A stretch of 64,000 nt of DNA from contig CDMY01000603.1 in assembly GCA_001179505.1 (NCBI GenBank), positions 186,001-250,000 on the forward strand. The letters run 5' to 3'. This document shows, piece by piece, positions 39,229-43,542 of this stretch. A program made the translations under genes and the position numbers. The number at the start of each line of letters is the position of its first letter. The stretch's first letter is position 1. The stretch comes from Vitrella brassicaformis CCMP3155 (lineage: Eukaryota; Protista; Chromerida). The notes below the pieces were generated by a model that saw only the letters and a program-made list of their open reading frames with translations, was not told the DNA's origin and did no database searches.

Positions 39229-39349
39229 TGATTGCACCTCTCAGCTGAAGGGAACTGAAGGGAGGCGCAGCTCGCAGCGAGTGCGAGCTAAAGAGGGCAG
39301 ATCTCCCGATGGCGAAAGAAGCGTCTGGGCCAACTTGAGGGCTGCCACG

Positions 39350-40669
39350 ATGATGACGGGCCCTTGCTGGGCCAGATCCCTCCTCGCCCTTCTATTTTTG
39401 GCGACCGCGGGCTTCTCTGCCGCTTTCGTGCCGCACTCTCTTCCACGCGGCGGCTCCATGTCTGCATTCCCCTCCGCAATGCGTCGCCGCTCGGTCCGCA
39501 TGTCGGCCGCTGCAGAGGTCGAACAGACGAACAGGGTGCGCCCACTGCAGGGCCTGGAGGAGGTGCAGGCAGCCATTGAGAAGGACAGCGGTGTCAACGT
39601 CATCTCAGTGGTGTTCATCCAAGCCAAGTGGTGCAAGAACTGCGCAGCCACGCGGCCCGTCCTCGAGGGGCTCGCCAAGGAGTGCGCAGAGGCCAAGACG
39701 CCAGTCAGCTTCTACTCCATCGACTTTGACGAGAGCAAGACAGCCATGACCGACATAGCACCGACCTTATCACGGCTGCCGTGGTGCCTCCTGTACGCCG
39801 CCGGCAGCGTGACGGCGTCAGAGAGCTTCGCGTGTGGCGAGTCGAAGGTTTACGGCGTGCTGAAGCCGCTGATTGACCTGTATTCCGGTCAGAAGGCTGG
39901 AGGGAGGGGAGGGGGTGAGTCGGTGGAGGTTGGTGTGACGCTCAAGCAGGAGCAGGAGAGCGAGCAGGAGCTGATGGAGGCGCTGAATGAGGTGTCGTCA
40001 CCCGCTGTCACTAAGATGTTTAACGATCTTTACAAACCACAGCCAGGTCAGCCACATGAACACGAACCACACGTAACCATCCACCCCACCTGCCCATTTC
40101 TGCCCATCTGACAGGGAAGCGGATCATCGGTGGGCTGCTGCTCGACACGCCGAAGGACGAGCTCGAGAAGCTGCCGGACCCGTCAGAGCTGGAGGCCCTT
40201 CGCAAGAAGGCGGCATCAGATCTGATCAACATCGGCGCGGACGAGAGGCGGCGCCGTGCCATCGCCGGGGCGGCCTCGGCGCTCGCCACCCTGGCCATTG
40301 GGTTCGCCTGTGTGAAGACGGGTGCATCACCACTCGCCAGGTTTGGTGCCGTCATTGTGCCGACATTCTTCACGGTTGGGTTCTCGCTGAGCGCCAAGGA
40401 GGGCCTCTGAAACGTCGCGCAAGCAGGTCGGCCGGCGCACAGCAGTGACTGCTGATTGCCTGTGATGTGTCATCTGTGTGGTGTGGCGGTGTGTGTGTGT
40501 GTGTGTGTGTGTGTCAGGGCTTTGGGACATCGGCAACGGTCTCGAGCGCATTGACGACAAGAATGTCGCCAAGGCCCTGCTTGCGAAAGTCAACAAGATG
40601 AACGCCCAAGGGCTCATCTACTCGGCAGTTGCAGCTGCACTTTTTGCAGTGGTCCCGTTCCCCAACTAG
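39350..40669 (+). CDS. Plastid-targeted thioredoxin (WCKNC) fused to a membrane domain containing an in-frame TGA; predicted selenoprotein
   Basis: Exons 39350-40046, 40115-40426, 40518-40669. Signal peptide ending SAA|FV followed by a Ser/Arg-rich transit peptide. TGA at 40408-40410 in EGL-U-NVAQA|GLWD, with the frame staying open across an in-phase intron to TAG at 40667-40669. Confidence 0.85.
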
Positions 40670-40748
40670 ATCCCACTTGACGAGGGAAATGGTCTGAGAA
40701 TGAAGTGGCGAGAGTTGGGCGGCGTGACGCATGTGGCCGCTGTGCTAT

Positions 40749-40819
40749 GGGGCCGACGAGTGAGGCGGGGGGCATAAAGTACGGGAGACGTACGTGTCCT
40801 TTGCTGAGAGGATGGCCCC
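40749..40819 (+). promoter_or_regulatory. SECIS element (type II, GUGA variant)
   Basis: Helix I GGGGCC 40749-54 / GGCCCC 40814-19. Core G-TGA 40760-63 / T-GA-G 40805-08. Helix II 40765-75 / 40794-804, fully paired with G-U wobbles. Unpaired AAA 40776-78. Mini-stem GTACG 40779-83 / CGTAC 40789-93. Confidence 0.88.
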
Positions 40820-41507
40820 GGGCGCAGATTGCCTGCTGCTGTCTGGCTCTCTCTCTCTGGGCGTGGAAGGCTGTTGTGTTGCAGTCAGTGTGTTGTAGTG
40901 CGGTTGGTGAGTGTCTGTACTTCCTTGCAAGGTTGTGCTGTGACAACAGACCCGTATGTATACGCTATCTGTTATGCGAACGGGTCAACGTGATCGTGTC
41001 AGTCCGTCGGAGAAGGTGCGAAAGGTGTCTGTCTGTCAAAAGGCGGCGGTGGCCAGCTACACCAGACTAGAAAAGCCTACACACATCCGTAAGTATCGAC
41101 ATTTGAGAACTCACACACACATGTCATGTCATGCACTCAGCAGCTGCGTACACACACCATTCGATTCATTACACAGGCAGCCGTGCAGACAGACTGACCA
41201 AGAACCCCACCCACCAAAAATACCGCAGCACAGTGCAGAAAGCTATTCACACATTCATTCACAGTCACACAGGCCGTGTTAGCAACCCACCCGCCCCACC
41301 CCATCCCACCCGCCACCATGGCATGCATGCATCAAAATCTTCAAAACCCGACAAACGGTCAAAACTGCTCCATCGGTCGGTCGCCCATCCATCCGTCCAT
41401 CCATCCACATGTCGGTGGGCAGGGCAGCAACTGAGCTGCTGCTATACTGAGCGGCTATCAACACACAGCCACACACACGGCACCCATTCCATTCTCTGGC
41501 GCCTCTC

Positions 41508-43542
41508 TCACACGAACACGTCACCGAGGCCAGCTGTCTCGTCCCCGTTGTTGTATGTGTATCGTGTGTGTGGTGGCCGTGTGTCGTTCTTGTACGTCAG
41601 CACGTCGTGCCGCCGGTTGTATGTGGACGTGCCGTAGTCGCCTTTGACGTGTGAAAGCATGATCATGATGCCCATGACTCCCGCATAAGCCCGGTCCCGT
41701 TTGTAAAACACGCGCATGCGCATCTCGGTGTTGGCCGGGATGACACGCTCGCCCTCTTCGTAGACACACGGAGCAATCCGCGACACATACCTGATGTGAC
41801 AGACAGCAACAAGGTGGGTGGGTGGATGTGTGTGTGTGTGTGTTGCGTGTGTGTATGGTGGTGTGTCCACCCACCCCAGCTCGTCTCCCGGTGCGTCTGG
41901 CTGTGTGCCATAGAGAGCGGGGGTGACGCAGAAGTCGTCACGTGTCTGCGGCAATTCCAGAGTGACGTTTATTGAGCCGATGTGGATGTGCCCTGATTGA
42001 TACAGACAGACACACACACAGTCAGACAGACACAGAGAGTGCAAGGCCACCAACATTGCTGCCCTGCCGAGCTATGGCGTACCCCGGATATAGGCGATCT
42101 CCATCTCTCGTCCGGTGGTCATCGTGACCTCCTTCACATCAACACAGTCTGGCGAAGCATCGCCATCGCCCACTGCGCCACCCTCCAGGCCACGCAGCGC
42201 ATTGACAGCAGCATCGGCATCATGATGTGTGTGTGTTTGGTGGCATGGCGGTACGTCATACTCGATGCGGCACTGGATGACATCCACCACGACCACCCGC
42301 ACCGGCTTGGTCTCCGGCGTGATCCGCCCGTATGTCACGGAATACTTCAACCGATACTCCTGTGCACACACACACGGGGAGAGGACCATCGATGAAGGCA
42401 CCCACACCACAGCAGGCTGCTTCGTGTATGGTGTTGTGTTGTGTTGTGGTGGTGCCTGCCTTCGGGTGCGGCCCCTGGCCGAAGAGGTTCTGGGGCCGTG
42501 GGGCGCGCAGGTGTGGCGGCACGGGAGGGCTGGGCTGCACACTCTCAGACACGAACGGGTCGTAATGCGTCACACAGTGGGTGCCGTCGGTGCAACACGC
42601 CACACCGCCAGTGGTGCCGTCTGCACGGCGAGAGAGAGAGAGAGAGATGGCCTGTCCGTCAACCATTCTTCATTCGTGTGGGCATCTCTCTCATCTCTTA
42701 TGTACCTGGTTGGCAGTGACACTCGATGCAGGCCTGAACGTCCGATACGTTGTCGGTGCGCAAGATGTGAACGTTCGCCAGCCACACCTCATCGCCTGAA
42801 CAATACCCCACACACACACCTAAGCTGCATTGCATGCCTCACTCGGTCTTCCGTGCAATGGCGACCCACCCACCTGATGTGGTGACGGCGTAGGGCGCTT
42901 TGAGCGTCACAGGTGTCCCACGCGACTCAGCACCTATGCCGAACATCTGTGGCAAGTCACGACACGGACCTGACAGAGCAATGGACAGCAACAAGCAAGC
43001 CCAATGAGTGACACACACGCCTGGCCTACACCACACCACACACACGTACCTGCGTTCGGCAGGAGGGTGGGTGGGCCGTGGGGGTCTGTACGGTTGGGTA
43101 GGATGGGGAAGACCAGCCAGTGGTGCAGATACACACTCGACAGCGGCACGGACGCATTATTTTCATCGACAATCTCAGCGTGGAAGCCACGGATGGCAAG
43201 AGGCCCTGCACAGAAGAAACACACACACACATTCAGAGGCCCATCTATGCTTTTCTGTGAGAGGGTGTGCATCTGACCTTTGGGCATCTTGAGAGTGGTC
43301 TCCCACGGCAGGCTGTTGAGCACATCGCCAGGCCGCAAAGAGAAAGGCCGGCTCACAAAGGTGTCGGTCACATCAGTGACATCACCACCACCACTATTCC
43401 CATCTTTGCTGCGTGTCGTCTCGTGCAGGTCGAACAGGAAACGGGGCGACGCCGACAGTCCCTGTGCTTCAATCTCCGACGCCGTCATGTGACCCGACGC
43501 CCCGGCAACCAGGAACAAAAAGACCAAGATGAAAGCAACCAT
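41508..43542 (-). CDS. Secreted SURNod19 (stress up-regulated Nod 19)-like protein
   Basis: Signal peptide [17 protein letters not shown]; [47 protein letters not shown]...GDELGYVS, YAGVMG. Confidence 0.75.

What the first reader, a model, noticed from the sequence alone, without database searches (positions are those of the whole stretch)
40408..40819. In-frame TGA plus a near-canonical SECIS hairpin: candidate new selenoprotein
Seen: the thioredoxin gene frame reads ...SAKEGL-TGA-NVAQA, crosses an in-phase GT-AG intron (40427-40517) and continues GLWDIGNGLERIDDKNVAKALL...LIYSAVAAALFAVVPFPN-TAG. About 80 nt after that stop is a hairpin with every eukaryotic type II SECIS feature: 6-bp helix I, G-UGA/GA kink-turn core, 11-bp helix II, unpaired AAA at the expected distance, and a 5-bp apical mini-stem. 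Established: SECIS-directed UGA-to-Sec recoding occurs in alveolates. Inference: the TGA encodes Sec. From memory, the N-I-G-x-x-E-R-x-R-R two-helix membrane segment resembles small membrane domains that carry a conserved Cys at about this position. Automated annotation would truncate this gene.
Basis: partly seen in the sequence, partly recalled or inferred. Interest (0 to 1): 0.95.

Follow-up and report, generated by a model that had tools for sequence, protein, structure and literature searches.

The report
Unannotated thioredoxin-fused membrane selenoprotein in Vitrella
The stop-like TGA in this Vitrella brassicaformis gene almost certainly encodes selenocysteine, but the protein belongs to an algal selenoprotein family already described in 2007; what is new is its fusion to a thioredoxin domain.

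Summary
The TGA (40408-40410), the in-phase GT-AG intron (40427-40517), the 55-codon continuation to TAG (40667-40669) and a type II SECIS-shaped hairpin (40749-40819) are all present.

- **Transcripts:** contigs from four public runs splice both introns as predicted, keep the TGA, and run on to 41143-41271. The hairpin therefore lies in the 3'UTR.
- **Homologues:** a search of 1.84 billion proteins found 108 relatives. Of these, 99 end exactly at the residue before the TGA column (...S-x-x-x-G-L), 3 carry Cys there and 2 carry W (probably TGA read as Trp by the gene caller). Ten fetched loci all have TGA at that codon, followed by a conserved in-frame continuation (BLASTP E 4e-12 and 7e-13 to the Vitrella exon-3 peptide).
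- **Family:** it is not new. It is "hypothetical protein 3" of Ostreococcus (Lobanov et al. 2007), probably the "Hypo" family of Jiang et al. 2020.
- **What is new:** the Vitrella annotation stops at the TGA. The N-terminal thioredoxin (WCKNC) fusion is unique among 107 cluster representatives; five others carry a CPYC/CGYC glutaredoxin instead. The predicted fold matches bacterial DUF2892/YgaP-like membrane domains.
- **Weak point:** Rfam SECIS models gave no hit, but they also missed the hairpin of a green-algal orthologue used as control.

Another first-stage note (s1-205619) already covers this same stretch.

The parts
39310..39339 (+). short upstream ORF (MAKEASGPT-stop) in the 5'UTR, in a different frame from the main ORF
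   Evidence: Sequence read. Transcript contigs start at 39296 and 39306.
39350..40046 (+). Exon 1 coding part. It holds a hydrophobic leader (MMTGPCWARSLLALLFLATAGFSAAF...), a Ser/Arg/Ala-rich stretch read as a bipartite plastid-type presequence (inferred), then a thioredoxin domain and an acidic linker.
   Evidence: ORF. Pfam Thioredoxin PF00085 scores 25.1 bits against a cut-off of 23.5, at residues 85-153. Transcripts cover it. The public model P0001 starts at an internal Met and lacks the leader.
39632..39643 (+). Thioredoxin active-site C-K-N-C, within W-C-K-N-C
   Evidence: Read directly from the sequence and the translation.
40047..40114 (+). intron 1, 68 nt, GT..AG, phase 1
   Evidence: The joint that skips 68 nt is present in contigs of all four runs. 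P0001 has the same junction...KPQPG-KRIIGG.
40115..40426 (+). Exon 2. It holds an amphipathic helix, the NIGADERRRR motif (40228-40257), a two-helix membrane hairpin, and the motif SAKEGL-U-NVAQA.
   Evidence: 108 homologues at E<=1e-3. Invariant columns are I, E, R, R, R of the N-I-x-x-x-E-R-x-R-R motif, and nearly invariant ones include S..GL.
40408..40410 (+). In-frame TGA read as selenocysteine
   Evidence: TGA is in the genome and in all transcript contigs. The same column is TGA in 10 homologous loci, Cys in P0037/P0059/P0097 and W in P0048/P0071. 99 of 108 predicted homologues stop exactly here.
40427..40517 (+). intron 2, 91 nt, GT..AG, phase 1, with a (TG)n run before the acceptor
   Evidence: The contig pieces 40112-40427 and 40523-onward are joined in all four runs. 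The four intervening record letters fit 40519-22.
40518..40669 (+). Exon 3 coding part: the WD-I-G-N-G-L beta-hairpin motif, the KVNKMN helix, a C-terminal hydrophobic helix, and TAG at 40667-40669.
   Evidence: BLASTP E 4e-12 to Cys-form P0097 and 7e-13 to the post-TGA ORF of L012. Identity to 8 homologues is 40-56%. Alignment.
40749..40819 (+). Type II SECIS-shaped hairpin: helix I, G-UGA-G / U-GA-G core (UGA 40761-63, GA 40806-07), 11-bp helix II, AAA 40776-78, 5-bp mini-stem
   Evidence: Folds (z -4.3 and -5.0). It is the only perfect pattern hit in the window and none occurred in 60 simulated windows. It is by far the best energy in the relaxed scan and lies inside the transcript. Rfam gave no hit.
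40670..41271 (+). 3'UTR, as far as the transcript contigs reach (41143 to 41271, depending on the run)
   Evidence: table 8

Best explanation
This is a Vitrella brassicaformis nuclear gene for a precursor of about 386 residues. The UGA at 40408 is decoded as selenocysteine, directed by the type II, GUGA-core SECIS hairpin in its 3'UTR (40749-40819).

The protein belongs to the algal selenoprotein family first listed as Ostreococcus 'hypothetical protein 3', probably the 'Hypo' family of later surveys.

Its layout, from the N-terminus, is:
- a plastid-type leader;
- a thioredoxin domain with WCKNC;
- an acidic linker and an amphipathic helix;
- the NIGxxERRRR motif;
- a two-helix membrane hairpin;
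- Sec immediately after the second helix, at the membrane surface;
- a small beta-hairpin (WDIGNGL);
- a last helix that ends in a hydrophobic segment.

The proposed mechanism is inferred, not shown. The interfacial selenol would be the redox-active residue, reacting with a membrane-borne or membrane-proximal oxidised substrate. The tethered thioredoxin CxxC, which topology places on the same side of the membrane, would then reduce it again. In other lineages the same job would fall to a fused CPYC glutaredoxin or to free reductants.
For: **Shown**
- The TGA, both introns and the hairpin are in the mRNA.
- 99 of 108 homologues stop at this column, 3 have Cys and 2 have W.
- All 10 fetched homologous loci have TGA followed by a conserved in-frame ORF.
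- The exon-3 peptide matches Cys forms and post-TGA ORFs at E 4e-12 and 7e-13.
- The family motif equals the published O. tauri and O. lucimarinus Sec proteins.
- The hairpin meets every structural SECIS criterion and is unique in the window.
- The Mamiellales-like orthologues L003 and L006 carry a GUGA type II SECIS at a similar distance.
- A G before the quartet and long mini-stems are the rule in Ostreococcus (PMC2375036).

**For the mechanism**
- The thioredoxin domain carries a CxxC.
- Five family representatives carry an N-terminal CPYC/CGYC glutaredoxin instead.
- The AF2 model of a Cys form (pLDDT 94) puts the Cys just after helix 67-83.
- The fold matches DUF2892 proteins at TM 0.70-0.80.
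- A bacterial cluster fuses glutaredoxin to a YgaP-like_TM domain.
Against: - Rfam SECIS models give no hit, even on the 96-nt hairpin alone. The same failure on the L003 control weakens this objection.
- A covariance model built from the L003/L006 SECIS did not find the Vitrella hairpin.
- Helix II has five G-U pairs.
- There is no direct evidence of selenium in the protein.
- I did not check the Sec machinery of this genome. Only unchecked first-stage notes speak of other selenoprotein genes.
- No second conserved Cys exists in the membrane domain, so the redox partner is a guess.
- Plastid targeting, membrane topology and substrate are all inferred.
- The identification with 'Hypo' of Jiang et al. 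rests on names, not sequences.
Confidence: 0.9

Rival explanations
1. The TGA is an ordinary stop. The protein would end at ...SAKEGL, as annotated. The open frame behind it and the hairpin would be coincidental or relics of an ancestral Cys or Sec form.
For: The public annotation stops there. Rfam finds no SECIS. In 58% GC DNA, a 55-codon open frame after a stop has roughly a 1-in-7 chance (my estimate).
Against: The post-TGA peptide is conserved at E 1e-12 against Cys forms and other post-TGA ORFs. Intron 2 keeps the phase and is spliced. TGA is kept across at least 10 loci of distant algae. A perfect SECIS pattern is not expected by chance. An intron downstream of a true stop would normally expose the mRNA to nonsense-mediated decay, yet the contigs have high depth.
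Confidence: 0.04
2. The UGA is read through, but by a near-cognate tRNA (Trp, Cys or Arg) or by a local recoding signal, not by the Sec machinery.
For: Two database homologues show W at the column. No direct evidence of selenium exists.
Against: The W calls are most simply gene callers using a code in which TGA is Trp, on environmental contigs. Relatives have Cys, the usual Sec replacement. SECIS-shaped hairpins lie in the 3'UTRs of this gene and of L003/L006. The family is a published selenoprotein family, and Ostreococcus cells were 75Se-labelled in that study, although this protein was not singled out.
Confidence: 0.03
3. Sec decoding is granted, but the function differs. The domain would be a sulfur or selenium carrier, or a chalcogen or metal-binding site, like the rhodanese-linked YgaP class. 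It would not be a thioredoxin-recycled reductase or peroxidase, and the Trx or Grx domains would only load or unload it.
For: The fold is similar to DUF2892/YgaP-like domains. From memory, these are often attached to rhodanese sulfurtransferases. There is a single conserved Sec and no resolving Cys in the domain.
Against: No rhodanese fusion was seen among the 107 representatives. The only recurrent partners are Grx and Trx. Sec is used overwhelmingly in redox catalysis (general knowledge).
Confidence: 0.25

Closest known systems
Ostreococcus tauri / O. lucimarinus selenoprotein 'hypothetical protein 3' (Lobanov et al. 2007, Genome Biol 8:R198, Additional file 2); probably the 'Hypo' family of Jiang et al. 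2020 (PMC7539508)
   Same: - The same motifs: N-I-D/G-x-x-E-R-x-R-R, ...G-F-x-x-S-A-x-x-G-L-U-N-I/V-A-Q-A-G-x-W-D-V/I, K-V-N-x-F/M-N, and a C-terminal hydrophobic helix.
- Sec falls in the same column.
- Both use a GUGA-core type II SECIS.
- phmmer links Vitrella exon 2 to P0081, which is the O. lucimarinus protein.
   Different: - Vitrella adds about 190 N-terminal residues: a plastid-type leader plus a thioredoxin domain with WCKNC. No other cluster representative has this.
- The gene has two introns, one of them between the Sec codon and the rest of the domain.
- Identity is only 35-45%.
Glutaredoxin-fused members of the same family (P0006, P0019/P0119, P0093, P0095; environmental eukaryotic contigs)
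   Same: They share the architecture: a leader, a thiol-oxidoreductase domain with a dithiol motif, a linker, and the Sec membrane domain. TGA is confirmed in L007 and L008.
   Different: The redox domain is a class I glutaredoxin (CPYC or CGYC), not a thioredoxin. This points to an independent fusion, or to a swap of the partner.
DUF2892 / YgaP-like transmembrane domain proteins (Pfam PF11127), including bacterial Grx-YgaP-like_TM fusions
   Same: - The predicted fold matches: TM 0.70-0.80 and rmsd 1.6-2.4 A over about 115 residues to AFDB clusters named DUF2892.
- Two family members give weak PF11127 hits.
- Both start with an N-[IV]-G-x-x-[DE]-R motif (the DUF2892 side is from memory).
- A bacterial cluster pairs the domain with glutaredoxin.
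   Different: - No Pfam hit reaches the gathering score, and the Vitrella pieces give none.
- The eukaryotic family has an extra beta-hairpin and a third helix.
- It uses Sec.
- Whether the DUF2892 Cys is in the equivalent position was not tested.
MSP, the 'membrane selenoprotein' of Chlamydomonas, Volvox, Ostreococcus and Dictyostelium
   Same: It is a small predicted membrane selenoprotein of unicellular eukaryotes, of unknown function.
   Different: The sequence is unrelated. The MSP alignment in the same supplement shows other motifs and other Sec positions, for example ...CEGGVU... near the N-terminus in Dictyostelium. I rejected it as the family.

Membership tests
Eukaryotic SECIS-dependent selenoprotein gene | In-frame UGA present in both genome and mRNA, with the reading frame open and conserved beyond it | tested here: met
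Eukaryotic SECIS-dependent selenoprotein gene | Homologues carry Sec (TGA) or Cys in the same alignment column | tested here: met
   TGA in 10 loci. Cys in P0037, P0059 and P0097. 99 of 108 predicted proteins end at the column.
Eukaryotic SECIS-dependent selenoprotein gene | SECIS element in the 3'UTR: helix I, internal loop, UGA/GA quartet, helix II of 9-13 bp, unpaired AA, apical loop or mini-stem | tested here: met
   Pattern scans with background are. The hairpin is inside the transcript. A G rather than an A precedes UGA, as in Ostreococcus.
Eukaryotic SECIS-dependent selenoprotein gene | Recognition by a curated SECIS covariance model | tested here: inconclusive
   Rfam 15 gives no SECIS hit at E<=10 on 1 kb, 64 kb or 96 nt. 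The orthologue control L003 is missed as well. SECISearch3 was not available.
Eukaryotic SECIS-dependent selenoprotein gene | Selenium actually incorporated, and Sec machinery present in the organism | not testable with these tools
   Only unchecked first-stage notes report other selenoprotein genes in this genome.
Ostreococcus 'hypothetical protein 3' selenoprotein family | Significant sequence similarity over the membrane domain, including the N-I-x-x-x-E-R-x-R-R and S-x-x-x-G-L-U-N-[IV]-[AG]-Q motifs | tested here: met
   phmmer E values run from 7.5e-11 to 1e-3 over 107 relatives. P0081 equals the published O. lucimarinus sequence.
Ostreococcus 'hypothetical protein 3' selenoprotein family | Conserved C-terminal part after Sec: W-D-[VI]-x-G-x-G-L, K-V-N-x-[FM]-N, and a hydrophobic helix | tested here: met
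DUF2892 / YgaP-like_TM (PF11127) | Pfam HMM match at or above the gathering score (25.3 bits) | tested here: not met
   The Vitrella pieces give no hit. P0026 and P0054 reach 14.4 and 16 bits. The full-length Cys forms give no hit at E<=0.1.
DUF2892 / YgaP-like_TM (PF11127) | Shared fold | tested here: met
   AFDB clusters named DUF2892 match at TM 0.70-0.80. The Atlas rows that carry PF11127 reach only TM 0.42-0.47 by the query, over part of the model. Both sides of each comparison are predictions.
DUF2892 / YgaP-like_TM (PF11127) | Conserved Cys in the position equivalent to the Sec | not tested
   I had no DUF2892 sequences in hand. The claim rests on memory only.
MSP (membrane selenoprotein) | Sequence similarity to the Chlamydomonas, Ostreococcus and Dictyostelium MSP | tested here: not met
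   Inspection of the published MSP alignment shows different motifs and different Sec positions.
Thioredoxin (PF00085) for the N-terminal domain | Pfam match above the gathering score, and a CxxC active site | tested here: met
   25.1 bits against 23.5. WCKNC lies at 39629-39643. NCBIfam thioredoxin scores only 25.3 bits against 96.8, so this is a divergent Trx-fold domain and not an orthologue of TrxA.

The most novel reading that the evidence does not exclude
The orphan 'hypothetical protein 3' selenoproteins would be a Sec-bearing eukaryotic branch of the DUF2892/YgaP-like membrane-domain superfamily. Their interfacial selenol would be serviced by thioredoxin-fold reductases. On this reading, the Vitrella Trx fusion and the Grx fusions elsewhere are 'Rosetta stone' fusions that reveal the partner. 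The Vitrella protein would then be a self-contained, plastid-membrane-anchored selenoenzyme, for example a lipid hydroperoxide or membrane-thiol reductase. That would give this 20-year-old orphan family, and possibly DUF2892 itself, a first testable function.
Probability: 0.35. Interest if true: 0.6.

Novelty: new member of a known kind. Interest (0 to 1): 0.45.

Why it matters
- **Annotation.** The public Vitrella protein is cut at the Sec codon and also lacks its leader. The same truncation affects about 92% of the family's database representatives (99 of 108), so the family is nearly invisible to domain databases.
- **Function.** The thioredoxin fusion here, the glutaredoxin fusions in relatives and the fold link to DUF2892 together give this orphan selenoprotein family a concrete biochemical hypothesis that can be tested.
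- **Organism.** My full-text searches found no paper that mentions selenoproteins together with Vitrella, or the selenoproteome together with Chromera. Chromerids are the photosynthetic relatives of apicomplexan parasites, which have very small selenoproteomes.

Tried and rejected
1. **Rfam cmscan.** I ran it on 1 kb, on the whole window and on the 96-nt hairpin. None gave a SECIS hit. The L003 orthologue control also gave none, so I treat the test as uninformative.
2. **Covariance model R1.** I built it from the L003 and L006 SECIS. It recovered the L007 and L009 candidates (E 0.1-0.3) but not the Vitrella hairpin, even with filters off. With an effective sequence number of 0.89 it is too sequence-specific.
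3. **MAFFT alignment of five orthologue SECIS candidates.** The 3' halves were misaligned, so I built no broader model.
4. **MSP hypothesis.** I considered that the family might be the known 'membrane selenoprotein' and rejected it on the published alignment.
5. **Pfam and NCBIfam on the pieces and on Cys forms.** No domain hit reached its threshold for the membrane part.
6. **PDB searches by fold and by sequence.** Nothing was significant.
7. **The search for related loci with alignment A1 in bacterial genomes.** Bacterial relatives were therefore not examined at sequence level.
8. **Search for another Trx-fused homologue using exon 1.** Only the Vitrella protein itself came back.
9. **SECIS scans of L005.** My scans found no convincing element.
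10. **Literature searches.** Vitrella + selenoprotein, Chromera + selenoproteome and DUF2892 + selenoprotein each returned zero papers.
Full report
**Organism and gene model.**
The exon-1 translation retrieves a single database protein, P0001, from Vitrella brassicaformis CCMP3155. It is 287 aa and is named "Thioredoxin domain-containing". P0001 uses the same first splice junction that I derive...KPQPG|KRIIGG, and ends at ...SAKEGL, which is the TGA at 40408-40410.

My model has these parts:
- ATG at 39350, which opens with a hydrophobic leader that the public model lacks;
- exon 1, running to 40046;
- intron 1, 40047-40114;
- exon 2, 40115-40426;
- intron 2, 40427-40517;
- exon 3, 40518-40669, ending in TAG.

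The spliced CDS is a multiple of three and translates to 386 codons with one internal TGA.

**Check of the observation.**
Logan contigs of four public runs lay on the stretch as 39296-40043 / 40112-40427 / 40523-41271. The exact ends vary by run.

The first joint is reported as a 68-nt GT..AG skip. The second falls in a masked (TG)n repeat, but the record coordinates leave exactly four letters, which fit 40519-22. The 91-nt intron is therefore removed as predicted.

No base differences were seen, so the TGA is not an assembly error. The contigs run 470-600 nt beyond the TAG, which puts the hairpin inside the 3'UTR.

**The hairpin.**
RNAfold gives the expected shape (-37.8 kcal/mol for 78 nt, z -5.0):
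- helix I, 7 bp;
- an internal loop;
- G-UGA-G opposite U-GA-G;
- helix II, 11 bp (five of them G-U);
- an unpaired AAA;
- a 5-bp mini-stem with a 5-nt loop.

A strict pattern scanner I wrote finds this as the only perfect hit on either strand of the 64-kb window. It requires UGA-N, an ungapped 9-13-bp helix II, AA, N-GA-N and a 6-bp helix I.

Sixty simulated windows with the same dinucleotide make-up gave no perfect hit and 0.033 near-perfect hits per window. A looser constrained-fold scanner gives six hits in the window. This one scores -38.9 kcal/mol, and the others -22 or weaker.

Rfam gives no SECIS match at any scale. It also misses the hairpin of a green-algal orthologue, L003. That orthologue's family has published SECIS elements, so I treat the Rfam negative as uninformative.

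Lobanov et al. report that nearly all Ostreococcus SECIS elements have a G before the quartet and long apical mini-stems. That is the form seen here.

**Homologues.**
I ran phmmer with the 97 residues of exon 2 that precede the TGA against 1.84 billion cluster representatives. It gave 108 proteins at E<=1e-3. Ninety-nine of them end in ...G-L (or G-M), exactly at the query's last residue. Gene callers therefore stopped at the same column in almost every relative.

The exceptions are informative:
- P0037, P0059 and P0097 continue with Cys (GL-C-N-[IV]-...).
- P0048 and P0071 continue with W, which most simply means TGA was read under a code where it stands for Trp.
- P0090 is a model that skips the exon.

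I fetched ten homologous loci (L003-L012), representing about six distinct genes. All have TGA at this codon, followed by an in-frame N-I-[AG]-Q-[AG]-G-x-W-D-V-D-G... continuation of about 55-80 codons.

The Vitrella exon-3 peptide matches the Cys form P0097 at E 4e-12 and the post-TGA ORF of L012 at E 7e-13. It is 40-56% identical to eight homologues.

**SECIS in orthologues.**
L003 and L006 carry a GUGA-core type II hairpin with CAA and a 7-bp mini-stem, 246 nt after their Sec codon. L007, L009, L010 and L012 each have one AUGA...GA hairpin 300-380 nt downstream, but without an unpaired AA. I regard these four as candidates only. I found none in L005.

**The family is already known.**
Additional file 2 of Lobanov et al. 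2007 (PMC2375036) prints O. tauri and O. lucimarinus "hypothetical protein 3". Its sequence includes ...LFFALGFVGSAKSGL-U-NIAQAGVWDVEGAGLQKIEDETIAQKIRDKVNDFN.... Hit P0081 is the O. lucimarinus protein up to its Sec.

The paper's hypothetical proteins 1 and 2 end in GCUG and KPCUGR. Jiang et al. 2020 list PUB, PITH and "Hypo" families. This family is therefore probably their "Hypo", described as about 80% Sec-containing. That is an inference from names, not from sequences.

It is not MSP, whose published alignment is unrelated.

**What is particular to Vitrella.**
Pfam finds a thioredoxin domain (25.1 bits against a cut-off of 23.5) with the motif WCKNC. Among 107 family representatives, only the Vitrella protein has a thioredoxin. 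Five others have an N-terminal class I glutaredoxin with CPYC or CGYC. So the Sec domain has been joined to dithiol oxidoreductases of two different kinds.

The N-terminus, MMTGPCWARSLLALLFLATAGFSAAF followed by a Ser/Arg/Ala-rich stretch, looks like a signal peptide plus transit peptide, as in complex-plastid algae. That is my inference. It was not tested with a predictor.

**Fold and likely mechanism.**
AlphaFold2 on the Cys form P0037, using a 35-sequence alignment, gives pLDDT 94 and pTM 0.83. The model has:
- helix 3-24;
- helix 30-57;
- a turn;
- helix 67-83;
- Cys86;
- a small beta-hairpin;
- helix 107-136.

Foldseek against the AFDB clusters returns family members first. After them come proteins named DUF2892 (TM 0.70-0.80) and the C-terminal domain of fungal Rax1/RGS proteins.

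The ESM Atlas search returns unnamed bacterial and archaeal proteins at TM 0.72-0.83. It also returns, at lower TM, a bacterial cluster that combines glutaredoxin with YgaP-like_TM. PDB searches gave nothing.

The arginine cluster before helix 30-57, together with the two-helix hairpin, places the N-terminal redox domain and the Sec on the same side of the membrane. This is an inference from the positive-inside rule.

I therefore propose an interfacial selenol that is recycled by the tethered Trx CxxC. The substrate is unknown. A sulfur or selenium carrier role is the main functional rival.

**Verdict.**
- The Sec reading is very likely correct (about 0.9).
- The family is known, and the Vitrella member is unannotated.
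- The Trx fusion and the DUF2892 fold link are useful additions but not a new kind of system.
- Another first-stage note (s1-205619) covers the same stretch. Several unchecked notes report other GUGA-type SECIS genes in this genome.

Noticed in passing
window 39310-39339: A nine-codon upstream ORF (ATG...TGA) lies in the 5'UTR, out of frame with the main ORF. It falls inside the transcript contigs that start at 39296 and 39306.
   Followed up: no
window 39350-39478: The public protein model P0001 starts at an internal Met (MRRRSVRM...). It omits an in-frame, transcribed, hydrophobic leader that looks like a signal peptide followed by a transit peptide.
   Followed up: partly
window 40475-40515: A (TG)n microsatellite fills the 3' end of intron 2, right up to the CAG acceptor. 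The read-laying tool masked it, which hid the joint from the joints table.
   Followed up: partly
window 41305-42000: A separate transcript begins about 35 nt after the end of this gene's contigs. Its 84-nt intron reads CT..AC on the + strand (41789-41872), so it is a convergent gene on the minus strand.
   Followed up: no
L007:1318-1387, L009:3346-3418, L010:941-1019, L012:3354-3424: Orthologues from environmental contigs have AUGA...GA kink-turn-type hairpins 300-380 nt after their Sec codon, but no unpaired AA in the apical region. They may be non-canonical SECIS forms.
   Followed up: partly
L005:3077-3620: This orthologue has the TGA and the conserved continuation, but my scans found no convincing SECIS-shaped hairpin in about 1.2 kb downstream.
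   Followed up: partly
P0048, P0071, P0090 (database proteins): Two environmental gene models show W at the Sec column, probably TGA called as Trp. A third model splices out the Sec-containing exon. These are three different ways in which annotation hides this selenoprotein.
   Followed up: partly
P0080 (1399 aa database protein): A very long protein matched the query in eight separate stretches (query residues 18-68). It may hold a repeat of the amphipathic-helix/NIxxxER segment, or the match may be compositional.
   Followed up: no
AFDB and ESM Atlas hits to model m1d1fb826bd84: The C-terminal membrane domain of fungal Rax1/RGS proteins (PF27892 RAX1_C) shares the predicted fold of this selenoprotein domain at TM up to 0.8. 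A bacterial Grx + YgaP-like_TM fusion cluster matches only part of the model (TM 0.47 by the query).
   Followed up: no
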